DNA of 63,748 bases, filler included, from Octopus bimaculoides (GCF_001194135.2; 5 parts of 4 records of this genome joined end to end with filler, not necessarily neighbours in it); one strand, 5' to 3'. Shown: positions 352-63,748, counted from the first letter of the whole stretch. The notes: a model not told the origin generated them from the letters alone. Numbers and translations: made by a program.

Positions 352-734
352 TTAATAGTATTAATTATAATAAAGTGCTAATCGGTTAAATGTAATTTTA
401 TTTATTTACTAGTAGGTGGTTAAGCCTTTCCACCTGTTGTCCGATGTTGTCCAATGTTCAATGTAATTGGTCAATTGAAATAAAATTGCAGTGAATTAAT
501 GAATAATGATTGATGTAAGTCAATTGTTGTTCATCAGTACTTCTCCATTTCCTGTTTTCTTTAAATTTTGATTCTTGATAAACCCATGTTTATCCTTGTC
601 TTTACTTATAATTTAGGAGCATAATATGCTTGCATATGTATGTCCATGGTTAAACATAAGTAATATACCAGTAGTGTAATGGATACAACTATCCCTTAGA
701 TGGTTATTTTAACCTCTAACTCAATTAACCTTTG

Positions 735-777
<43 letters not shown>

Positions 778-787
778 NNNNNNNNNN

Positions 788-829
<42 letters not shown>

Positions 830-1683
830 CACTTTTCCATGCTTACATGTATCAGGTAGATTTTGTATGGCTGGATGCTCTTTCTGTTGCCAAACTTCAC
901 CTGTTTCCAAGCAGGGTATTACTTTATCATATCCAAACATGATTTCATGGAAGATTGGAAACAAAAAACGCCCTTACATGACATTGACAACTATTTCCTG
1001 ATGTTAAGTCAAGGAGACAGTAAAAACACACAATGAATAAGAGAAAATTGCTACAATTGTTTCCACACATTGTTACACCTATTGTACCTGGGGAGATGAT
1101 TTAATTAACATATCATATATTAACTATCACCCATCAAAAATGTAAAATGTAGTTCTTCAGATGATTGTTTTAAATAATTCCTTCGTTAGATCAGATTGTC
1201 ATTTCACTCAGTATGAAAATGAATACCCGAAGTAGTGTACTATTTTCTATCAATTTTCACACAGAACTAAACCCATAAATATAGTGACACACAAACCGCA
1301 AGTATAATCACAATACAACATGCAAATACAAAAAAACTAACACAAAATAACTGTCAAGTTAATTATAAATATCTGTCCTTGTGGTCAGATAATAAGGAAG
1401 AAAAAAATGAGTAAAATAAAATTAAGTGTCTAGAGATAACAATGTAATAAAGTGATAAATACTAACCATTTCTGTATTTATCAACTGTTTACTAGAAAAG
1501 GATCTAAGCTACTCTCTGTTTCTTACAACAAAACATTATGACTCCATTATGAAGTTAATTGTTTTGAAACAATTAGAAAAGTAAGTTACTCAGTAAACTC
1601 ACCCCGGCATACATATTCTTTCATGCACCCACATACAAGGTAGTGTATTTAGTTTTATATATATATATATATTCTTCGTGCGG

Positions 1684-1936
1684 GTGACACGTAAAAGCAC
1701 CCACTACACTCTCTGAGTGGTTGGCGTTAGGAAGGGCATCCAGCTGTAGAAACTCTGCCAAATTAGATTGGAGCCTGGTGTTGCCATCCGGTTTCACCAG
1801 TCCTCAGTCAAATCGTCCAACCCATGCTAGCATNNNNNNNNNNGTGTTGCCATCCGGTTTCACCAGTCCTCAGTCAAATCGTCCAACCCATGCTAGCATG
1901 GAAAGCGGGCGTTAAACGATGATGATGATGATGATG

Positions 1937-1937
<1 letters not shown>
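1684..1937 (+). mobile_element. 3' tail of an RTE-type LINE (or RTE-tailed SINE)
   Basis: Ends CCAACCCATGCTAGCATGGAAAGCGGGCGTTAAACGATGATGATG; the same sequence is linked to an RTE RT fragment at 7731-8862. A ~48-bp duplication across the 10-N gap at 1834-1843 is likely an assembly artefact. Confidence 0.75.
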
Positions 1938-1992
<55 letters not shown>

Positions 1993-2327
1993 TTATTTAT
2001 ATACCTCACATCTCTTTCTTCTCTCTGTCTTTATCTCTCTCACTTTCCAGTTGGGCAGGCCATGAATTCACCACTTCAGTAAGACATCTGTTCTTCTCCC
2101 TCTATCATAGTGTCTTTCTCCAGTCTATACCTCACTCAGTTGAGGGGTCTTATTTTGCAGGCACTCTGCAACCTCACTTGTACTGATGTGTCATGTAAAA
2201 AGTGCCCAATACACTCTGTTAGGTGACTGGCATTAGGAAGGGCGTCCAGCTGTAGCAACTATGCCAAAGCAGACATAGAATCTGGCAGAGCCCTCTGGCT
2301 CGTTTGTTCTTGTTGAACTGTCTAACC

Positions 2328-2400
2328 CAGTGTTTCTCAACCTTTTTACACTTGCGTAACCCTTAAAATAAATTACATATCTCAAGGAATCCCTGCACAA
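2328..2400 (+). mobile_element. hAT/Charlie-type MITE, one terminus only
   Basis: CAGTGTTTCTCAACCT terminus resembling the TIR of the complete element at 21098-21265; no partner TIR found. Confidence 0.4.
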
Positions 2401-2557
2401 AAAAATTATATACCATATCTTTCTCATATTGTTTTCATCATAATTCATGTAGTAAATATGATATATATTTGTTATATTTGTTATATTTTCAACATCAAAA
2501 TCAAATTAAACCACAACCAAATGGAAATTGTAGTTGTGGCTGATACAAGTGCCACCT

Positions 2558-2805
2558 GACTGGCTCCCCGTGCCGGTGGCACATAAGAAGCACCATCTGG
2601 ACGTGGTTCATGCCAGCCCCCTCACCCTTACTGGCTTCTGTGCTGGTGTCACGTAAAAAGCACCCACTACACTCTCAGAGTGATTGGCGTTAGGAAGGGC
2701 ATCCAGCTGTAGAAACACTGCCAGATCAGATTAGAGCCTGGTGCTTGCCAAAACCCAAACTGTCCAACCCATGCCAGCATGGAAAATGGACATTAAACGA
2801 TGATG

Positions 2806-2806
<1 letters not shown>
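2558..2806 (+). mobile_element. Diverged RTE-type 3' tail
   Basis: Two GTGCC/GGCAC-ACGTAAAAAGCACC-type repeat units, then the tail shared with 1684-1937, ending in (GAT)n. Confidence 0.7.
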
Positions 2807-2844
<38 letters not shown>

Positions 2845-2845
<1 letters not shown>

Positions 2846-3053
2846 GGAGTGGCTGTGTGGTAAGTAGCTTGCTTACCAACCACATGGTCCCAGGTTCAGT
2901 CCCACTGCATGGCATCTTGGGCAAGTGTCTTCTACTATAGCCTTGGGCTGACCAAAGCCTTGTGAGTGGATTTGGTAGACGGAAACTGAAAGAAGCCCGC
3001 CGTATATATGTATATATATGTGTATGTGTTTGTGTGTCTGTGTTTGTCACCCC
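2845..3053 (+). mobile_element. tRNA-derived SINE family A, 3'-truncated
   Basis: GGAGTGGCTGTGTGGTAAG (A-box-like) ... GGTTCAGTCCC (B-box-like); matches copies at 3625, 15676, 21429, 22116, 50491 and 53485. Confidence 0.85.
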
Positions 3054-3624
3054 ACTTGGCACAGATTGACCTTAAACTCTGCTGTACATGTAGACTATTT
3101 TAATGTTCTAGTTCACTTTGTGTTATGCACTGGAACTGAGCCTAAAATCATGTGGTTGGCAAGTAAACTTCTTACCATTCAGCCACCCCTGCACTTATCA
3201 TCATCATCTAATGTCTATTTTCCACTCTGAATGGGCTGGACAGTTGCACAGGAACTGATAAGTCAGAAGACTGCACCAATCCCTGATGTCTGCTTTGGCA
3301 TTGTTTCTATTGTTGGATGCCCTTCCTAACATCAAATATTTCAGTAATATTTCACCCATCTTGTATCTTTCATTCAGTCAATTCATATCCATTACTGAAT
3401 GTGTTTGATGCCCAGTTTTCTTAATTTGCTTAGCCTTCCCCACTCTCACAAGTTCAGATTGTGCTTACATTATTTTTCACTCATCTGCTGTCTCTGCTCT
3501 CACTTCATATTATCACTACTATGATGGACCCTGCTTTGAAATCATCTTTTAACAAGGAACATTTCTATAAAATTTAAAAACTGTCATCTAATTCAATCAT
3601 GTTTCTGTTAGTTTCATAAATATA

Positions 3625-4342
3625 GGCGCAGGAGTGGCTGTGTGGTAAGTAGCTTGCTAACCAACCATATGGTTCCAGGTTCAGTCCCACTGCGTGGCAC
3701 CCTGGGCGAGTGTCTTCTACTATAGCCTCGGGCTGACCAAAGCCTTGTGAGTGGATTTGGTAGACGGAAACTGAAAGAAGCCCGTGGTATATATATATAT
3801 TTGTGTGTCTGTGTTTGTCCCCCCAACATCGCTTGACAACTGATGCTGGTGTGTTTACGTTCCCTTAACTTAGCGGTTCGGCAAAAGAGACCGATAGAAT
3901 AAGTACTAGGCTTACAAAGAATGTCTTGGGTTCGATTTGCTCGACTAAAGGCGGTGCTCCAGCATGGCCACAGTCAAACGANNNNNNNNNNAGCTTGCTA
4001 ACCAACCATATGGTTCCAGGTTCAGTCCCACTGCGTGGCACCCTGGGCGAGTGTCTTCTACTATAGCCTCGGGCTGACCAAAGCCTTGTGAGTGGATTTG
4101 GTAGACGGAAACTGAAAGAAGCCCGTGGTATATATATATATTTGTGTGTCTGTGTTTGTCCCCCCAACATCGCTTGACAACTGATGCTGGTGTGTTTACG
4201 TTCCCTTAACTTAGCGGTTCGGCAAAAGAGACCGATAGAATAAGTACTAGGCTTACAAAGAATGTCTTGGGTTCGATTTGCTCGACTAAAGGCGGTGCTC
4301 CAGCATGGCCACAGTCAAACGACTGAAACAAGTAAAAGAAAA
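3625..4342 (+). mobile_element. SINE family A, full length, duplicated across a 10-N gap
   Basis: Full element with central (TA)n/(TG)n and tail CCAGCATGGCCACAGTCAAACGACTGAAACAAGTAAAAGA. 3652-3981 appears identical to 3992-4321 across the gap at 3982-3991, which suggests an unmerged contig overlap. Confidence 0.85.
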
Positions 4343-54860: not shown

Positions 54861-56199
54861 ATATATATATATATACATATATTCCCATATTCTGTCCATA
54901 TTAGCTATGGACAGAATATAAGAATTTATATTCTCTACCAAAAATTAAAAAAAACGAAGAGAAGCAAACTACTTACAGGTATTGAAGTGTCGCTACTTTC
55001 TGACATAAATCATCGGGAAGGGCTTCGATTGCAGCTCTATCAAATTGTATAATCGTTAATCTATGACTCCCCGTCAAATCCGGAAAAACTGTTTGTTGGT
55101 CAGCCTTTGAAATGACTCTGCAAATACAGAAATAGATGTATTAATTGTGTTTTGATTTAATAATTTTGCGGAGTTTAAACATACTTATTAGAGGAATGAG
55201 GAATCTTTTCCGGGAAGTACGCCACATGAGACATCAATCATCATAATACGGGACGCATTACAAAAAATTTCAATTGACGGTAATCTTTTCGTTAGTCGTG
55301 TCATTCAGAAAGTCCCGCAGGCAGTTATTTCCCACAGAACTGGCTTAGGACACTCTGCATTCCCTTTAGAGGGGTGGATTTGTAGTATAGTTAGAGCTTT
55401 AGATAAAATGCTTGACTTTATTTAGAAAGGACAGTGGTAGTGATATGAATAAGGCATGGGCGTTGGACACGGCAAGAGTACTGTGAAAATGAGACACGAG
55501 CAGACTGGGAGTGCCTGAGGAATTCAGTAGGAGCCTAGTCAGCTCCAAGGAGCAAAGACCATTATAGAAAAGATAGAAAAGGCGCAGAGGCAGAGAAATG
55601 GGAGAGAAACAAGAGACAGCTCGTTTGAGGGCTAGAGCCTAGGATATATTTGTAAATGATTTATGCTAATCTGTTAGATGGCCCCTTTTCTAGATGCGGT
55701 CCACAATGTCTGTATGTACAACACCTGCACCGTCCCAAAACTGAGCGTTTCTTTAATGACATAATAGCAACAAAGGCACAAACATTCAATATTGATGTCA
55801 CACAAAGGAATTACAAGACAATGTGAGGAACGTGCGAGCACACACAAAACAGGGGGACACACACACACATACACACAAACACGCGCATACAGACATACAC
55901 ACACACACATACTATGTGTGTGTGTGTGATAAACAAGAGCAGGAAATAAGTAATACAGATTAAAAATTTTTTAGAAGCAACAAATGCGAAAAACCCATCC
56001 CTATAGGAGTGAGAGACCACCACTTAAGAAGAAGAACAATTCTGGTTTATTAGGGCTTATTTGTGTTCAATTTTATATGTTGGTTTAATTTTCGTTATTT
56101 AGTCATTTAATCTTAGTCATTTAGGCGTTTTGTGTAATCGCCTCTTATTTTCCTCTTAATTAGTGAAATACTCCTGATGACTCTCAACCCACCCTGTAG

Positions 56200-56990
56200 T
56201 CCATTCAGCATTTGTATCAGTACTCGTTATTGATCCGGGTAACCGTGTAGTCCGGACACTGTGGACGAAGAATTGCTTTTGCCTCGGGTGATCTTCAGTA
56301 GCTTGCTTGTAATCAGACAGGACTCGTTTTTTTTATTTTGCTCCACGTTTGTTTTATTACAATCCTTAACCCCTTTGCTCCCTTCGTCTTACAATACAGT
56401 CTTCCCACATTCAGAAAACGATGGGTCAGGGATGAAAGCAGGGACTTCTTTGGTTTTTCGGCACACTATCTCTTCAGTTCCTGGTGTTAGCAGAACTTAA
56501 CTGAAATACGCTAAAATTTCTTTGCTGACAAACCTTTCTCTTTTCAATACTAATTGATGTAATTCTTGCAAACAACTCATTTAAATTCAGATTACAATTT
56601 ATTACTCAGCCTTGTTTCATTTTCCTGTGCTTAGAATCCTTTAATGATTCTCCTATCAAATCTTCTGAGTCTCTAATCTTTTGAATCCATAGCTTCCCTT
56701 CAGCACGTATTATTGCAGCATGTGTTGATGTAGTCTTTCCTCCTTCACCTTCTTCTTTCTCTACATCAACTGACCTACTTGTCGCCACATCTACAACAGC
56801 CACACACTTTAGACACCATACGCTAAACTTGCATCGATTTCACAAACGGAGACCTTGACAGCACCATTCAGTGGGAGTCTTGCTAATACTTCTTCTTGTC
56901 CACTCCAAATGTTGAACTTCAGTATCACTGAGGATCTGTTCTGGCGAAGTTACATCCTTAGCATAGATAGAACTGCATATAAAAGACTGA
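56200..56990 (-). pseudogene. Old RTE-like ORF2 relic
   Basis: Weak, frameshifted resemblance to the RTE C-terminal region; boundaries approximate. Confidence 0.35.
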
Positions 56991-57370: not shown

Positions 57371-59647
57371 TGGATTCTTTTACTAGCTAATGTCTTTTCT
57401 ACAAGTGTTATTCCACAACAAAATATGCAGATTACTTCTACCGATCTTTGAAGCATCAATTTTACCGATTTTTGAAGGCTCACAATAAAGGATAAAAGCC
57501 CTGTAATTTCTTTCAAACTTACCAAATAAAAAGCAAAATGCAAAATGAATTTTCTTAATTGCTTGATTTTTTTAAAAATTAATTTGAGATATTCAGCTCT
57601 GACAAAACCCATGTCTAAAGCTATTCTTAAACCTAATTTTACGGTGTAAATTTCATGATGAACTCCTTTGTTTGAACTTTGTGGGTCAAGTTTACACATG
57701 ACATTTTTTAATGTTGTATTTTTCCTTCAATTATCCCCTATCTAAGTGTGTAATACTGTTCATTAGGAAACTGAGCTGGGGATGATGATAACACTAATTA
57801 TAGCAGCCATTAAATCTCGGTACGGTTGATCCAGTATTTATTTATCAATTTATTTATTTATATATTTATTGCTTATTTGTTTCCCTGTAAAATGTACACG
57901 ATAATTTTGATAATAAAAGCGTTGATCACCAAATTGTTACTTTCCTTTCAGGATTTTATGATTTGTATATTAATTGTGTTCATGATTTAATGCTCCAATA
58001 ATTTTTTCTTCAAAATGAAGATTACAATGATGATCACGTTAATGTTGCTGCTACTGCCACCGTTCCTGCTGCTGCCACTGCTGCAGCTGCTGCTGCTGCT
58101 GCCGCCGCCGCTGCTGCCGCCGCCGCTACTGCCGCCGCTGCTACCGCCGCCGCNNNNNNNNNNNNNNNNNNNNNNNNNNNNNNNNNNNNNNNNNNNNNNN
58201 NNNNNNNNNNNNNNNNNNNNNNNNNNNNNNNNNNNNNNNNNNNNNNNNNNNNNNNNNNNNNNNNNNNNNNNNNNNNNNNNNNNNNNNNNNNNNNNNNNNN
58301 NNNNNNNNNNNNNNNNNNNNNNNNNNNNNNNNNNNNNNNNNNNNNNNNNNNNNNNNNNNNNNNNNNNNNNNNNNNNNNNNNNNNNNNNNNNNNNNNNNNN
58401 NNNNNNNNNNNNNNNNNNNNNNNNNNNNNNNNNNNNNNGCCACTATCGTCTCTGCCATCAGAGTACCACTACTACTTATTAAGCTCAAGGGCTGACAGTG
58501 ATGCAACAAAATGCAACGAGAACAACGTTGAACAACGAGAAATTTACAAAACACCTTTAAGTTGGACAAACGACATTATATGAATAAATAAATCTAGAGC
58601 AAAATAAGAGCCGAACTACTCTGTTTACAGGACTGTTCGTCACACGCTATGAGTTAAAGCAATATGATTTTGATGTATCTTCTTTTCTTTTCTCTTTAAG
58701 TCAGGAAATTACCAAGCGCGGGTATCAGATCGGATGACAGATTAAATCTACTGCTCTACTAAGCCCAGGGCATGATTTGAACTCAAAAGGCCAAGTGATG
58801 AGAGAAATATCGTAGGGTATATGGTCAATCCATCTTTGAGTTCTGTCAAACCACAGTCTTGGATTTTTATTTTTTAGTAACTCCGCAAGAATGAAATCCA
58901 AGAAGTGACCTCGGTAGGAATTTAACATAGACTAGAGAATCGAAACAACAAATATTGTATGTCATTCTGTCTAACTCTGCCAATTCGCCACCTGGTGGAA
59001 GGATGTTAGGTAAAACAGAGACAACAACGAATCCATTCAAGTTATTCATTGAATTCCCATATGCAATGTTCATTTTTATTAGGAAATTGAAGATGTCAAA
59101 AATATATTTTATTTTAAAAGAATTTTTAAAAATAACTATTTAAAATATTATGCATATTCTATATCAAATATCTATATAATTATAAAATATAATGAGATAT
59201 ATTTTTATCTGATGTATAAGAATATGATGTATGAGAATATGATATTTATAAACGAAAAGTAAAACATATTTTAAATTTTTGAAATGAGAAATTAATCAAT
59301 AACTAGTTTGTTAGATGTTTGAAATACAATTGTATTTTTAAAAATCCCAATTTACTATTTATGAGATACAAAAACATAAAAAAAGGATAACGTAATATTA
59401 CTACGTGCCACTAGACCGTGTAAGGGGCCGTGTTAACTTAAATTTCATATCGTCTCTATTTCTCTCTATTGCAAAGGCACTGTATAGTGATTAGGTGTGT
59501 GCGTTTGAATGAGTTCAAGATAGTAGAGGTTCTGCGGAAAAAGGAATCGAGATTTGAGATGTTTATTGCGTTGTTTCAGGCATGATATGACAAGGAAGGA
59601 GACACCTATTACTTTGACAAGTTTGTATAACTCGGTTTGCTAGATCC

Positions 59648-59926
59648 GTTGTTGTTGTTGGCACTCCGTCGCTTACGACGTCGAGGGTTCCAGTTGATCC
59701 GATCAACGGAACAGCCTGCTCGTGAAATTAACGTGCAAGTGGCTGAGCACTCCACAGACACGTGTACCCTTAGCGTAGTTCTTGGGGGAGATTCAGCGTG
59801 ACACAGAGTGTGACAAGGCTGGCCCTTTGAAATACAGGTACAGCAGAAACAGGAAGTAAGAGTGAGAGAAAGTTGTGGTGGAAGAGTACACCATCCCCTG
59901 CCGGAGCCTCGTGGAGCTTTAGGTGT
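59648..59926 (-). mobile_element. SINE family E, 3' part ending in (CAA)n; head lost in gap
   Basis: Shares the ACACCTAA(A)GCTCCACG.GGCTCCGGCAG...CCACAACTTTCTCTCACTCTT module with family D (18221-18310), then has a different tail. Confidence 0.75.
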
Positions 59927-60618
59927 NNNNNNNNNNNNNNNNNNNNNNNNNNNNNNNNNNNNNNNNNNNNNNNNNNNNNNNNNNNNNNNNNNNNNNNNNN
60001 NNNNNNNNNNNNNNNNNNNNNNNNNNNNNNNNNNNNNNNNNNNNNNNNNNNNNNNNNNNNNNNNNNNNNNNNNNNNNNNNNNNNNNNNNNNNNNNNNNNN
60101 NNNNNNNNNNNNNNNNNNNNNNNNNNNNNNNNNNNNNNNNNNNNNNNNNNNNNNNNNNNNNNNNNNNNNNNNNNNNNNNNNNNNNNNNNNNNNNNNNNNN
60201 NNNNNNNNNNNNNNNNNNNNNNNNNNNNNNNNNNNNNNNNNNNNNNNNNNNNNNNNNNNNNNNNNNNNNNNNNNNNNNNNNNNNNNNNNNNNNNNNNNNN
60301 NNNNNNNNNNNNNNNNNNNNNNNNNNNNNNNNNNNNNNNNNNNNNNNNNNNNNNNNNNNNNNNNNNNNNNNNNNNNNNNNNNNNNNNNNNNNNNNNNNNN
60401 NNNNNNNNNNNNNNNNNNNNNNNNNNNNNNNNNNNNNNNNNNNNNNNNNNNNNNNNNNNNNNNNNNNNNNNNNNNNNNNNNNNNNNNNNNNNNNNNNNNN
60501 NNNNNNNNNNNNNNNNNNNNNNNNNNNNNNNNNNNNNNNNNNNNNNNNNNNNNNNNNNNNNNNNNNNNNNNNNNNNNNNNNNNNNNNNNNNNNNNNNNNN
60601 NNNNNNNNNNNNNNNNNN

Positions 60619-60649
<31 letters not shown>

Positions 60650-60790
60650 GGGAGAATTTACGAAAAAAAAACAACAGACGAAGACAGGTGGTGTAAACAA
60701 CAAATGGATGTATTAGTTTAACGCTCGGGAATAGAGAAAGTCTTTGACGTTTCGAGCTAGGCTCTTCAACTGAAAGGAACACAGAAAGAA
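60650..60790 (-). mobile_element. Penelope-type terminal repeat relic with decayed minimal hammerhead
   Basis: Minus strand 60772-60746: CAGTTGA-A-GAGC-CTA-GCTC-GAAACGTC. It has the palindromic ACGT stem III and GTC site, but the core differs from CTGATGA at two positions. Confidence 0.45.
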
Positions 60791-60900
60791 ATAAGGAGAG
60801 AAACAAGGAGGAAAGAAATATAAATGTAGTGGACAGTGATCTGCAAAATAGCTAGTTGTGAAATCTCAAGAACAGATCAAAGTAGGAACTATACTAGTCG

Positions 60901-61281
60901 CCAAACCAAAGTGGCTGTTCCATGTTACTACTGGTTTAACCCCAGGCAGATCTTCCGTCGGCTGGTCATCAGTGTGACGCTGCACGATTTGTATAAAATA
61001 TATATTCCTAGCAGAGGGAGCGAACCGCCATCATCATCTAGCAGGTAACTTGATCGCTCTGGTAGACAGGTGCTCGCGACTGAGGATGAGTAAAATAACT
61101 CGAAACTGAAACTGAACCAGTCTCGCGATCCTGTTAACTGCTAGAGGGTGGTAGTGGTCCGCTCTCCCTGCTATCAATATACAGTGTTTATAACGAGTGT
61201 AGCGTCGCACCGATAACCAGCTAGCGGAAGATCTGCCTAGGGTTAAACTAGTAGTAAGATGGAACAATCATTTTGATGTGG
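60901..61281 (+). ncRNA. ~380-nt imperfect long inverted repeat (rod-like RNA) capped by a hammerhead ribozyme; candidate retrozyme or viroid-like element
   Basis: 60916-60985 pairs in register with 61266-61197: 60/70 Watson-Crick, 5 G-U, 5 mismatches (manual count). Pairing continues inward to 61057/61125 and outward to about 60901/61281. Confidence 0.75.
61065..61135 (+). ncRNA. Full-length type I hammerhead ribozyme; predicted cleavage 3' of C61122 (GUC)
   Basis: Stem I TCGCGA(61074-79)/TCGCGA(61123-28); core CTGAGGA (61080-86) plus an extra T; stem II GAGT/ACTC with loop AAAATA; GAAA (61102-05); stem III ACTG/CAGT with a 9-nt loop; C17 = 61122; distal stem I GACAGG(61065-70)/CCTGTT(61130-35) beyond a TGC/T internal loop. 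Confidence 0.88.
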
Positions 61282-61294
61282 GGATTGATTTTTT

Positions 61295-61386
<92 letters not shown>

Positions 61387-62699
61387 TATATATATATATA
61401 TTTATATAGAATTACATATACATACATATAATGTAAAGTAAATGAAAGCAAAATATGCTCAGGATAGATAGCACAGAGTAGGGCTCAAATGTATAGGAAC
61501 TTAAATTCCAACTTCATCCAGGCTGGTGTCGCAGCATCGAGAGTTAGCTATAAGTGCAATCTCTACTAAGCTGTTTTGGCGGTAGTAAAGTTTATAAATA
61601 TAGTTAGGCTTGAGACATATTTTTACATGGAACATAAAATACAGATTACAGAGTAAAGAAAACTGTGTAAAATCTTATCTCGACAGCTGTTTCAAGATGA
61701 CCATGATTCACGCTATAACGATATTCATAAGTAATATTGAATGATATCACAGGAGTACATCCAGTGACACTTACAAATGAAATTGTTAAAGTAAGTTAGG
61801 CATCAATTTTCAAGAGCAGGGTGACAAATGCAAATTGTCTAGCAGTGTCAGCAAATATATAGCTACAAAAACAATAGAGAAGGGTCGTAAAAAAGGGGTT
61901 GGAGGAAGCAAGGGGAATAATAAAATAGAAGGCGTGGTTAAGAGATGATAGGAGATGAAGAGAGAGCTAGATAAAAAAAAAAACAGGTATAAAAACAAAA
62001 ACATGAAGTCAATAGTAGGCCAAAGAAATTATGTTGAAAGTTAATCTAGTCGTTGACCATAAAATTGTCAGATAAAAATGCAGAAAAGAGTAGCAGAGAC
62101 AATCAAGTGAGGGGTGTGTGAAAATTAAGCTTTAAGGTAAGAGAGGGCGGGGTGGGAGACAATAGCAGAAGAAAGTACGGCAAAGAAAAGATGAGAAATT
62201 ATACTGTTTTTACATAATGAATAAAGGTCTTGTAGAATTTATGACTGCAAGAGAAATTTATATATATATATATATATCCAAATTTATCAAAATTCATACA
62301 TTACTATATTTTGCATAATAAATAATAAAAATTAAAAATTTAGAGAAGGATGTAAGAACCAAGTAATAGAAGGATATATAAACCAATTTAAACCCTAAAA
62401 ATGTAGAATACTTTTATATAAAATGGAAACCTCATAATGCTTCATCCTAGCAAATGATTAAGGTAGTCATGATAAGACCATTCAACAATGAATCCATAAA
62501 TAAATTTAGATTTCATCTGAGGAAGAAGTCCACATTTTCTATTGACTGAAAACCAGGGATTAAAGGCAAAATATAGGATAATTAAGTTCTATAACACATA
62601 AACTTATTTAAAAAACCATAAGAGAATATAGTTATATAAAATCATTTCCAGCATTATAAAAAAGTCTTAAAGGATGTACGAACATAAGCTGTAGATATA

Positions 62700-62782
<83 letters not shown>

Positions 62783-63748
62783 CACACACACACAAAGATA
62801 TCATATATATATATAAAGAATATTTTATAATCATAAAATGTAATTACAAATAGCTAAAAAATATCAATGTAATTACCATATTGTATTATATTTTACAATG
62901 ATTAACAGTAGACAGAAATTATAAGCCCTCCGCAAATCATTGAATGTTACACCAGTATATACGAGAGTAAATAGAAATACAAAATACAAAATATAAAAAC
63001 ATGATATAATATAAAAGAATAAATAAAATGAAAAAATATTTATATAAAATTTCAATAAGAGATTTATAAAATGAAAATATAGACATAAGGTTGAAAGAGT
63101 TTTCATTATTTCATTATTGAAGCTATAGAATACATACTGGATATAAAGAGTGATAAAGGATGAAAAATAAAAATAAAAATAAAAATAAATAAATGATAAT
63201 AAGAATAAATAAATAACTAAATAAATAATAAGGATAGGTCGAGGTGTTCTTAACAAAGCAAATTAAAAAATAAATGAAGATGAGAATACCATTGGATGCA
63301 GTTTTATAAAGTAAGATGTAATATTACAAGCACTGATATATGTAGAATAATATAGTTCCTAGGGGTATGGAGTACGCCTAAGGGAAGCGTATGATCTGAT
63401 AATTAATTATAAATATACGTATTATGAGTGATAGGGAAGAAAGTCTTAGAACTGAAGGAAAAACAGTGCAATTACCGTTTAGGATGAATGCATACTAATC
63501 TGGTAGCGGTTATATTATATATGATTATATAATTTACTACACTAGAGGTAAATTACTTCATAAAACTGCATCCAATGGTATCCTCATCTTCATGTATAGT
63601 AATACCCTTTTATAAATAAATATATTTTGGGGAATAAATTATGGATTTTTCCCTTATGAGGTTTTTTCACGCTAGCTACTTGATAAATTCTTATAAAAGA
63701 CTTCATCGTATTATTGAATTAATTATATATATATATATATATATATAT

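What the first reader, a model, noticed from the sequence alone, without database searches (positions are those of the whole stretch)
61065..61135. Intact full-length type I hammerhead ribozyme with Schistosoma-like tertiary contacts
Seen in sequence: every conserved core nucleotide is present (CUGAGGA, GAAA, A15.1-U16.1, GUC site) and all three stems pair. Established knowledge, recalled and worth re-checking: the Schistosoma Smα hammerhead has a 6-bp proximal stem I, a G-UAC-U bulge opposite a single U, and loop II CAAAUA. Here there is a 6-bp proximal stem I, G-UGC-U opposite U, and loop II AAAAUA. An extra nucleotide between A9 and G10.1 is tolerated in the ChCMVd viroid hammerhead. Inference: this is a fast, physiologically competent ribozyme, while every other hammerhead-like motif in the window is decayed.
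Basis: partly seen in the sequence, partly recalled or inferred. Interest (0 to 1): 0.9.

Follow-up and report, generated by a model that had tools for sequence, protein, structure and literature searches.

The report
Hammerhead ribozyme in a foldback repeat
The sequence is a real self-cleaving "hammerhead" RNA motif of the kind already known from animal repeat elements, sitting in an old, silent, slightly damaged copy of a small hairpin-shaped mobile element, so it is a good example of a known thing rather than something new.

Summary
The motif is present exactly as described at 61065-61135 (+). All core nucleotides, three helices and a GUC site are there, and it is far beyond chance (0 hits in 40 Mb of matched random sequence). 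It belongs to a family of about 20-40 hammerhead-bearing copies in the same (coded) eukaryotic genome. Across them the core is almost invariant, stem II changes by complementary substitutions, and the consensus loop II is CAAAUA with a UCC/GUGC internal loop six base pairs from the core, as in the Schistosoma ribozyme. The "type I, Schistosoma-like hammerhead" reading is therefore supported.

"Intact, fast, physiologically competent" is not shown:
- This copy has a 6-nt GAAACT tandem duplication at the core/stem III boundary, which creates an isoenergetic mis-registered fold.
- It sits at the tip of a ~400-nt foldback made of a full unit and an inverted, hammerhead-less unit. The foldback competes with stem I (about 8 kcal/mol).
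- The two arms have diverged neutrally.
- Three RNA-seq runs show zero reads.
- Rfam reports no hammerhead hit even at E<=10.

Best reading: a dead monomer copy of a retrozyme / Penelope-like-associated non-autonomous retroelement. It is a new member of a known kind and of modest interest.

The parts
61065..61135 (+). Type I hammerhead ribozyme motif (whole)
   Evidence: Sequence read. It is the only descriptor hit in the piece, with none in 40 Mb of random sequence.
61065..61070 (+). Stem I distal, 5' strand GACAGG. It pairs with 61130-61135 CCUGUU.
61071..61073 (+). Internal loop 1, 5' side UGC (with G61070 it reads GUGC). Opposite is U61129, followed by CC. It corresponds to Schistosoma GUAC:UCCA.
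   Evidence: PMC2632901.
61074..61079 (+). Stem I proximal, 5' strand UCGCGA. It pairs with 61123-61128 UCGCGA.
   Evidence: 61076 G>A and 61126 C>U both occur among paralogues.
61080..61087 (+). Core strand C3-A9, CUGAGGA, plus an extra U (61087) before G10.1.
   Evidence: Among paralogues only A6 (61083 A>G, about 14% of reads) varies. A sister subfamily has N7=A.
61088..61101 (+). Stem II GAGU/ACUC with loop II AAAAUA. The family majority has GAGC/GCUC with CAAAUA.
61102..61105 (+). Core GAAA (G12 A13 A14 A15.1).
   Evidence: It is invariant among paralogues.
61108..61113 (+). Second copy of the GAAACT tandem duplication (first copy 61102-07). It is absent from paralogues and enlarges loop III from 3 to 9 nt.
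   Evidence: Loose ends and 'left out 6'. Conformer energies.
61105..61121 (+). Stem III ACUG/CAGU (61105-08/61118-21) with a 9-nt loop.
61122..61123 (+). Predicted cleavage site, C17 | U1.1 (triplet GUC).
   Evidence: Position follows from the motif. Cleavage itself is not tested.
61117..61292 (+). Right arm: the body and 3' part of the hammerhead-bearing unit. The outer 61200-61280 is the most abundant part of the family.
60890..61062 (-). Left arm: an inverted copy of the unit body. Its homology starts inside the stem III 3' strand (CCAG), 3 nt at the cleavage site (TCT of GTCTC) are missing, and it has no hammerhead.
   Evidence: Alignment (130/176 Watson-Crick). Inverted repeat I1.
61293..61400 (.). 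T-run and (TATG)n(TA)n(TG)n microsatellite abutting the right end. This is a possible insertion target.
   Evidence: The PLE target bias is described in PMC8557442.

Best explanation
This is a genuine type I hammerhead ribozyme of the canonical 'Schistosoma class': a 4-bp helix II with a 6-nt loop, and an internal loop in helix I six base pairs from the core.

It belongs to a moderately repeated family of short non-coding elements in a eukaryotic genome. About 20-40 copies carry the hammerhead 5' half, and about 33-88 carry its 3' half plus the inner right arm. The outer arms are roughly twice as abundant again by read depth.

The family is most likely a non-autonomous retroelement of the animal non-LTR retrozyme / Penelope-like-element (PLE) lineage. 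In a transcript the ribozyme would cut after C61122 by the usual in-line transesterification, giving a 2',3'-cyclic phosphate and a 5'-OH. In tandem or dimeric transcripts this releases unit-length RNA that can be circularised and reverse-transcribed.

The copy in this window is a single unit fused head to head with an inverted, hammerhead-less unit, making a ~400-nt foldback next to a microsatellite. It is old (arms 74% complementary, diverged neutrally), carries a 6-nt duplication at the core/stem III boundary and is not detectably transcribed. It is best seen as a decaying monomer whose ribozyme may still cleave in vitro but has no demonstrated role at this locus.

Shown here: the motif, the family, core conservation, frequency-matched complementary changes in stem II (unphased), the foldback anatomy and the lack of RNA. 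Inferred: cleavage, RNA-mediated propagation and the retrozyme/PLE affiliation.
For: - Motif and chance.
- Family size: single-copy word depth is 14-56 against 285-2175 over the core and 461-4170 over 61126-37; read depth.
- Core versus periphery: 1 of 12 core positions varies against 11 of 14 in stem II plus loop II, p=0.0005.
- Frequency-matched complementary changes: 61088 G>C 9% / 61101 C>G 8%; 61090 G>A 12% / 61099 C>U 8%; 61091 U>C 58% / 61098 A>G 78%; also 61076 G>A / 61126 C>U in stem I. A sister subfamily differs in the core only at the normally free position 7.
- Conservation of a ribozyme across subfamilies argues for an RNA intermediate.
- Schistosoma-type loops. The extra U is tolerated.
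- Unit size (~400 nt), highly self-paired RNA (-218.5 kcal/mol, z=-19.5) and element GC of 46% fit published animal retrozymes, which are 150-450 bp, under 50% GC and 'highly self-paired' (PMC7229834). Monomer copies are common (preprint 10.64898/2026.07.22.740005).
- An inverted 5'-truncated copy adjacent to the unit, heavy 5' truncation (depth gradient) and a microsatellite target are hallmarks of PLE-type insertion (PMC8557442).
- Neutral divergence of the arms (14 G.U vs 11 AxC, p=0.69) and zero RNA depth fit a dead copy.
Against: - No Rfam hammerhead match even at E<=10 on a 201-nt slice.
- There is no tandem repeat and no second hammerhead in the 8.9-kb piece, so the defining tandem arrangement of retrozymes is not seen here.
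- No RT/GIY-YIG ORF is nearby.
- PLE hammerheads are usually minimal, lacking helix III and loop contacts (PMC6155905), whereas this one is canonical.
- Several paralogue contigs (5-8) share the same left arm/hammerhead junction. That means the foldback is copied as a unit, which a DNA-mobilised foldback/MITE would also explain.
- The covariation is inferred from unphased read and contig frequencies, not from aligned full copies.
- Nearest-neighbour folding gives helix III low probability (0-7%) in both this copy and the consensus.
Confidence: 0.55

Rival explanations
1. The family is a foldback/MITE-like DNA transposon. The long arms are terminal inverted repeats, the element moves as DNA, and the hammerhead in the apical loop is a captured passenger with no role in propagation.
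For: - 160-nt inverted arms.
- The outer arms are the most abundant part.
- Many short foldback variants exist with different centres and 25-39-nt fillers.
- 5-8 paralogue contigs share the same left arm/hammerhead junction, so the foldback is copied whole.
- No RT ORF is nearby.
Against: - A passenger ribozyme in a DNA-mobilised element should decay. Instead the core is kept across subfamilies, stem II changes are complementary, and N7 is the only free core position.
- There is no convincing target-site duplication (only TATA).
- No transposase is in the piece.
- The depth gradient also fits 5' truncation.
Confidence: 0.2
2. The foldback at this locus arose in a single Penelope-like target-primed insertion event. 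That event laid down a 5'-truncated unit plus an inverted, more truncated unit. The foldback is an insertion by-product and not the transposing unit.
For: - PLE insertions 'often' have an inverted 5'-truncated copy adjacent at the 5' end and target microsatellites (PMC8557442).
- The left arm starts inside stem III and lacks the hammerhead.
- The right end abuts (TATG)n(TA)n(TG)n.
- Other family foldbacks have different junction points.
Against: - The same left arm/hammerhead junction recurs in 5-8 paralogue contigs, which independent events would not produce.
- No PLE ORF is detected here.
- The hammerhead is canonical rather than the minimal PLE type.
Confidence: 0.15
3. It is an Sm-alpha-type SINE-like element. 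A pol III-transcribed short retroposon carries the hammerhead, as in schistosomes.
For: - The loop II and internal loop 1 architecture is Schistosoma-like.
- The family consensus has a B-box-like GGTTCGCTC at 61155-63 (variants 61155 T>G and 61159 C>T).
- The unit has a simple-repeat tail.
Against: - No A box lies at a suitable distance (read).
- ARAGORN finds no tRNA-like head.
- The stems and the core (N7=G, extra U) differ from Sm-alpha as I recall it.
- The B-box match is short and could be chance.
Confidence: 0.07
4. It is a hammerhead look-alike with no catalytic activity in any copy. The conservation merely reflects recent amplification.
For: - No Rfam hit.
- Helix III is predicted to be weak.
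- No cleavage-end evidence in RNA-seq.
Against: - The paralogues are 10-20% diverged, yet the core is kept and stem II covaries.
- The peripheral contact residues match the crystallographically defined motif.
- The chance rate is below 1 per 40 Mb.
Confidence: 0.03

Closest known systems
Schistosoma mansoni Sm-alpha type I hammerhead (SINE-like repeat; crystal structure of Martick & Scott 2006)
   Same: - Type I topology.
- 4-bp helix II capped by a 6-nt loop ending in A (family consensus CAAAUA, identical).
- A 6-bp proximal helix I followed by an internal loop with U on the 3' strand and G-U-N-C on the 5' strand.
- GUC cleavage triplet.
- Embedded in a short interspersed repeat.
   Different: - N7 is G (or A) rather than U.
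- There is an extra U between A9 and G10.1.
- Helix sequences are unrelated.
- Helix III is ACUG/CAGU with a near-palindromic triloop (9-nt loop in this copy).
- The element is a foldback with no clear pol III head.
- Activity is untested.
Animal non-LTR retrozymes (Cervera & de la Pena 2020, PMC7229834)
   Same: - Canonical type I hammerhead with loop-loop elements.
- Unit of a few hundred nt.
- GC below 50%.
- RNA predicted to be highly self-paired.
- Monomer derivatives exist.
   Different: - No tandem repeat at this locus.
- No linear or circular RNA detected.
- The unit here is an inverted pair rather than a head-to-tail array.
Penelope-like element pLTR hammerheads and PLE insertion architecture (PMC8557442; Cervera & de la Pena 2014)
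   Same: - An inverted 5'-truncated copy adjacent to the unit forms inverted repeats.
- Strong 5' truncation.
- Microsatellite target.
- A hammerhead lies within a few hundred nt of the 3' end.
   Different: - PLE hammerheads are usually minimal, without helix III or tertiary contacts; this one is canonical.
- No RT/GIY-YIG ORF in the piece.
- The same junction is shared by several copies.
Chrysanthemum chlorotic mottle viroid (+) hammerhead with extra A10
   Same: It has one extra nucleotide between A9 and G10.1. A U at that place is compatible with, and even improved, trans-cleavage (PMC3705267).
   Different: It is a type III viroid ribozyme with an extra A in nature. Here the extra residue is U, is fixed across an animal-type repeat family, and also occurs in unrelated metagenome contigs.
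Newt/axolotl satellite hammerheads acting as dimers
   Same: The family-consensus helix III region ACUGA-G-UCAGU is nearly palindromic. Its self-duplex is -14.6 kcal/mol against -1.2 for the hairpin, as in hammerheads that form an extended helix III between two copies.
   Different: Helix III here has 4 bp, against 1-2 bp in the amphibian ribozymes, so monomeric cleavage is plausible. This copy's duplication halves the dimer potential (-7.1).

Membership tests
Hammerhead ribozyme, type I | Conserved core C3 U4 G5 A6 N7 G8 A9 ... G12 A13 A14, an A15.1-U16.1 pair, and H17 at the cleavage site | tested here: met
   CUGAGGA 61080-86, GAAA 61102-05, A61105-U61121, C61122. One extra U (61087) after A9 is a documented tolerated variation.
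Hammerhead ribozyme, type I | Three helices around the core, with helix I open (5' and 3' ends in helix I) | tested here: met
   Helix I 6+6 bp, helix II 4 bp, helix III 4 bp. The hammerhead-constrained fold is -19.1 against an MFE of -20.4 kcal/mol for the 71-mer.
Hammerhead ribozyme, type I | Helices supported by covariation in relatives while the core stays fixed | tested here: inconclusive
   Paralogue reads and contigs show frequency-matched complementary changes at three stem II pairs and one stem I pair. The core varies at 1 of 12 positions against 11 of 14 in stem II/loop II, p=0.0005. The variants are unphased, so pair-by-pair compensation is inferred and not observed.
Hammerhead ribozyme, type I | Match to the curated covariance model (Rfam Hammerhead_1 and clan) | tested here: not met
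   No hammerhead family is listed at E<=10 on the 8.9-kb piece or on 61000-61200. Likely causes are the core insertion, the 6-nt duplication and the long interrupted helix I. This lowers confidence but does not outweigh the family evidence.
Hammerhead ribozyme, type I | Loop/loop tertiary contact elements: the 3' A of loop 2, the 5' U of loop 1, and an extrahelical pyrimidine | tested here: met
   A61097, U61129 and C61073 are at positions equivalent to Schistosoma L2.A6, IL1.U1 and IL1.C8 (PMC2632901). This is sequence-level only.
Hammerhead ribozyme, type I | Site-specific self-cleavage | not testable with these tools
   No transcript of the locus exists in which to look for ends. Reads of one expressed paralogue are too few, and their loose ends were not reported.
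Animal non-LTR retrozyme | Head-to-tail tandem repeats of 150-450 bp, each with a type I hammerhead | tested here: not met
   The piece holds a single hammerhead and no direct repeat of the unit. No 'goes back' joints appear among the listed contig joints. Whether tandem arrays exist elsewhere in the genome could not be tested.
Animal non-LTR retrozyme | Low GC (<50%) and a highly self-paired unit-length RNA | tested here: met
   GC is 46%. The 403-nt fold is -218.5 kcal/mol with z=-19.5.
Animal non-LTR retrozyme | Expression as linear and circular unit-length RNAs | tested here: inconclusive
   Zero depth at the locus in three RNA-seq runs sampled at about 6% each. Trace reads come from one paralogue. 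The library type may exclude small or circular RNAs.
Penelope-like element (pLTR / insertion) | RT plus GIY-YIG endonuclease ORF, or sequence identity to a PLE terminus | tested here: not met
   No Pfam match in any ORF of the piece. Identity to a PLE elsewhere in the genome is not testable here.
Penelope-like element (pLTR / insertion) | Inverted 5'-truncated copy adjacent to the unit, 5' truncation, and a microsatellite target | tested here: met
   compared with PMC8557442.
MITE / foldback DNA transposon | Terminal inverted repeats flanked by a target-site duplication | tested here: inconclusive
   Long inverted arms are present. Only a 4-nt TATA is shared by the flanks, which is uninformative in AT-rich DNA.
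Sm-alpha-type SINE | Internal pol III A and B boxes / tRNA-like head | tested here: not met
   There is no tRNA-like structure. Only a B-box-like GGTTCGCTC appears in the family consensus, and no A box.

The most novel reading that the evidence does not exclude
The transposing unit may be the whole ~400-nt hairpin with a full-length hammerhead at its apex, a 'ribozyme-tipped foldback'. Cutting the apical junction would convert a long hairpin transcript into a nicked duplex or rod with 5'-OH and cyclic-phosphate ends, ready for ligation. The family, together with unrelated minimal hammerheads in palindromic elements of another eukaryote (L001-L003), would also carry a naturally fixed U insertion after A9. 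Until now that variant was known only as an engineered, faster variant of a viroid ribozyme.
Probability: 0.15. Interest if true: 0.55.

Novelty: new member of a known kind. Interest (0 to 1): 0.3.

Why it matters
Type I hammerheads in animal repeats, their Schistosoma-type tertiary contacts, their link to retrozymes and Penelope-like elements, and monomeric dead copies are all established, so the finding mainly adds one more family.

Three details have some value:
- The core variant with an extra U after A9 is fixed across a natural family, and the same variant occurs in unrelated eukaryotic contigs. It matches an engineered substitution reported to speed up a viroid hammerhead.
- Rfam's models miss it entirely, a reminder that covariance-model scans under-call divergent hammerheads.
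- The element is a foldback with the ribozyme at the apex. Several copies share this arrangement, and I did not find it described in the papers I searched.

None of this opens a long-standing question.

Tried and rejected
- Rfam cmscan on the whole piece and on a 201-nt slice gave no hammerhead, only microsatellite-driven miRNA look-alikes and hairpin-driven MIR hits.
- Looking for RNA 5' ends at 61123 failed because the locus has no reads. At 80% likeness only 10 and 18 reads from one paralogue were found, beginning at 2 places, and their loose ends were not printed in two attempts. The apparent drop of RNA reads right of the cleavage site (25 against 3) is therefore too weak to use.
- Using a spurious 77-aa ORF across the element as bait to fetch paralogue DNA gave no hits. 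An exact look-up of the 150-aa ORF to identify the host or a better assembly found nothing on record.
- Pfam on ten ORFs and a tRNA scan gave no coding or SINE-head clue.
- Pattern scans of viral and prokaryotic genome collections found nothing.
- The metagenome scan found three contigs. I first judged them not to be hammerheads. On a relaxed descriptor they fit minimal hammerheads with a 1-2-bp helix III, but they share no other sequence with this element, so they are not relatives.
- A literature search for the core string returned only unrelated primer matches.
- I tested whether the rod is maintained at RNA level on the + strand (G.U against AxC asymmetry). There was no signal, so I dropped the idea that this copy is a selected viroid-like rod.
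- The host organism stayed coded. The genome-size guess (~0.4 Gb, from read depth) is rough and is not used for any conclusion.

Full report
**Observation.** The sequence at 61065-61135 (+) reads as a complete type I hammerhead.
- Helix I has a 6-bp distal part (61065-70/61130-35) and a 6-bp proximal part (UCGCGA 61074-79 / UCGCGA 61123-28). They are separated by an internal loop, UGC opposite U61129.
- The core is CUGAGGA (61080-86), followed by one extra U (61087).
- Helix II is GAGU/ACUC with loop AAAAUA.
- GAAA is at 61102-05.
- Helix III is ACUG/CAGU (61105-08/61118-21) with a 9-nt loop.
- C17 is at 61122.

My descriptor scan finds this as the only such motif on either strand of the piece. 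It finds none in 40 Mb of composition-matched random sequence, even with relaxed stems. A looser core-only pattern finds two other places, at 56443-56477 (-) and 62517-62583 (+), which fail the stem requirements.

The locus is real DNA. Contigs from independent runs match it with 0-2 differences, and twelve DNA runs from three studies hold it.

**The failed check.** No hammerhead family appears at E<=10, either on the 8.9-kb piece or on a 201-nt slice where the filters are lax. I treat this as a real mark against membership. It is outweighed by the family evidence below. The core insertion, a 6-nt duplication and a long interrupted helix I are all penalised by a model built on canonical seeds.

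**Family evidence.** DNA reads and contigs of the same coded organism show paralogues.
- Copy number: single-copy word depth is 14-56 depending on the run. Summed depth over the core is 285-2175, and over 61126-37 it is 461-4170. That means about 20-40 copies of the hammerhead 5' half and about 33-88 of its 3' half plus the inner right arm. Raw reads agree.
- Divergence: most paralogue reads are under 90% identical to the window.
- Core: at a 3% threshold the only variable core position is A6 (61083 A>G, 14% of reads). GAAA is invariant.
- Stem II and loop II: 11 of 14 positions vary, against 1 of 12 in the core (Fisher p=0.0005).
- Complementary changes: stem II changes come in complementary, frequency-matched pairs. 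These are 61088 G>C 9% with 61101 C>G 8%, 61090 G>A 12% with 61099 C>U 8%, and 61091 U>C 58% with 61098 A>G 78%, which gives the series U-A, U.G, C-G. In helix I, 61076 G>A accompanies 61126 C>U.
- Sister subfamily: it reads ACUCGCGA-CUGAAGA-U-GAGC-CAAAUA-GCUC. It differs in the core only at position 7, the one free position, and keeps the extra U.
- Decay: decayed copies also exist, for example CUGAGAAUAAG and broken cleavage sites.

The caveat is that all of this is unphased read and contig statistics, not an alignment of full copies.

**Peripheral elements.** PMC2632901 states that the Schistosoma hammerhead has loop 2 CAAAUA and internal loop 1 UCCA:GUAC. The 3' A of loop 2 pairs with the 5' U of the internal loop, and the last pyrimidine of GUAC is extrahelical and inserts into loop 2. 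Here the internal loop is UCC(U):GUGC, six base pairs from the core. Loop 2 is AAAAUA in this copy and CAAAUA in most paralogues (61092 A>C). The three contact residues (A61097, U61129, C61073) are in place.

The extra nucleotide after A9 is documented in the chrysanthemum chlorotic mottle viroid (+) hammerhead. An extra A there is tolerated, and replacing it by U raised the trans-cleavage rate 3-4-fold (PMC3705267).

**What is wrong with this particular copy.**
1. Duplication. The paralogues read GAAACUGA-GUCAGUC or GAAACUGAA-UCAGUC, whereas the window reads GAAACU-GAAACU-GAACCAGUC. This is a 6-nt tandem duplication at the boundary of the core and helix III. It allows a second register in which six extra bases separate helix II from G12. 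That register is within 0.5 kcal/mol of the canonical one (-18.6 against -19.1).
2. Stem II and loop II. The closing pair of helix II is U-A where the majority has C-G, and loop II starts with A rather than C.
3. Competing foldback. The motif is the tip of a 403-nt foldback (-218.5 kcal/mol, z=-19.5). The foldback register pairs 61125-35 with 61047-57 and not with the hammerhead's 5' strand. Forcing the hammerhead costs 6.6 kcal/mol in a 106-nt context and 8.1 in the full element.
4. No RNA. Three RNA-seq runs, each sampled at about 1.8 Gb, have zero depth from 61000 to 61199. At 80% likeness only a handful of reads from one paralogue appear.

**Anatomy of the element.** The left arm (60890-61062, read on the minus strand) is an inverted copy of 61117-61292. 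Its homology begins inside the 3' strand of helix III (CCAG), three bases at the cleavage site (TCT of GTCTC) are missing, and there is no hammerhead. The arms are 130/176 Watson-Crick. Their transition differences give 14 G.U and 11 AxC on the + strand, with 18 transversion mismatches (p=0.69). This is neutral decay, not maintenance of an RNA rod at this locus.

The outer arm segments (60900-60975 and 61200-61280) are several-fold more abundant than the hammerhead segment. The right end abuts T7 and (TATG)n(TA)n(TG)n. The element has 46% GC in a 34% GC region, and there is no convincing target-site duplication. Other copies of the arm family form shorter foldbacks with different junctions and 25-39-nt fillers. 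However, 5-8 contigs carry the same left-arm sequence directly upstream of 61053, so at least one subfamily is copied as a whole foldback.

**Interpretation.** Conservation of a ribozyme core with compensated stems across subfamilies is what one expects if master copies need the ribozyme, that is, if propagation goes through RNA. The following match the animal non-LTR retrozymes and their proposed PLE origin (PMC7229834; preprint 10.64898/2026.07.22.740005):
- unit size;
- GC content;
- self-paired RNA;
- a canonical type I hammerhead;
- frequent monomer derivatives.

The inverted truncated partner, the 5' truncation gradient and the microsatellite target match PLE-type insertions (PMC8557442).

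Against this:
- there is no tandem array or PLE ORF in the piece;
- PLE hammerheads are usually minimal;
- the shared junction would equally suit a DNA-mobilised foldback.

I therefore give the retroelement reading about 0.55, with a MITE-like reading at 0.2. I hold the ribozyme identity itself at about 0.9, and in vitro activity of this damaged copy at roughly even odds.

**Mechanism.** In a transcript the three-way junction folds and loop II docks on the helix I internal loop. The 2'-OH of C61122 then attacks its 3' phosphate, with G12 and G8 acting as general base and acid. This leaves ...GUC>p and 5'-OH-UCGCGA.... These steps follow from established hammerhead chemistry and are inferred, not shown. 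The family-consensus helix III region is nearly palindromic, with a self-duplex of -14.6 against -1.2 kcal/mol for the hairpin. Two units could therefore also form a double hammerhead, as in newt and axolotl repeats. With 4 bp in helix III, monomeric cleavage is also plausible.

**Novelty.** This is a new member of a known kind. The modestly new points are the naturally fixed U insertion after A9, its invisibility to Rfam, and the apex-of-foldback arrangement. I did not find the last of these described in a targeted literature search. Perreault et al. describe insertions after A6, after A13 and near C3, but none after A9 in the passages I read. The host remains coded, so if it is a schistosome or another well-studied species the family may already be catalogued.

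Noticed in passing
L001:2249-2630; L002:1126-1156 (-); L003:2906-2936 (-): Three metagenome contigs carry minimal hammerhead-like motifs with the same core variant: CUGAGGA plus an extra U, helix II GAGCA/UGCUC, helix III of only 1-2 bp, and helix I of 4-6 bp. L003 also holds a U5 snRNA gene, so they are eukaryotic host DNA. On L001 the motif sits in each arm of a 382-nt, 97% perfect palindrome. On L002 and L003 it follows a 63-nt-arm hairpin. They share no other similarity with the window element. They were found with a pattern taken from this motif, so the shared core is by ascertainment.
   Followed up: partly
window 60720-60860: This is a very high-copy repeat. DNA read depth is in the thousands against about 5 for single copy, and RNA depth is about 1000-2000 per run. 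A frequent variant skips 58-59 nt (60758>60818, with TACG inserted) and is seen in both RNA reads and DNA contigs. It is unrelated to the hammerhead element and lies 40 nt to its left.
   Followed up: no
window 61155-61163 (family consensus): Most paralogues have 61155 T>G and 61159 C>T, giving GGTTCGCTC. This resembles a pol III B box (GGTTCGANNCC). The left arm has GGTTCGCTCCC in reverse complement. No A box was seen.
   Followed up: partly
window 61068-61109 (reads of a paralogue): One paralogue (61091C, 61095G, 61096C, 61098G) is weakly expressed in two of three RNA-seq runs. Its reads cover the hammerhead 5' half (9 and 16 reads) but hardly the region right of the cleavage site (1 and 2 reads), whereas DNA reads cover both sides. 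This could reflect cleaved RNA or a truncated copy. The reads begin at only 2 places, so they may be duplicates.
   Followed up: partly
window 58150-58450 and 59925-60618: There are runs of N (assembly gaps) inside the piece. The second ends in (TA)n only 270 nt upstream of the foldback, so further units could be hidden there.
   Followed up: no
window 58028-58147: A GCN/CTG-type triplet repeat (TGCTGC...GCCGCC, 7 overlapping 42-nt copies) runs into the first N gap. It may be a coding poly-Ala/Gln/Ser tract on one strand.
   Followed up: no
window 61296-61430, 62689-62816, 55852-55930, 54862-54933: TA/TG/CA/TATG microsatellites produce all the top Rfam 'miRNA' hits (mir-297, mir-3149, mir-568 and others), well below gathering scores. 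These are artefacts of simple repeats.
   Followed up: yes
window 61010-61175: On the 201-nt slice Rfam reports MIR6457 and MIR7724 look-alikes (27.8 and 18.2 bits against gathering scores of 140 and 100). This simply reflects the long hairpin of the foldback. Whether the arms yield small RNAs was not tested.
   Followed up: no
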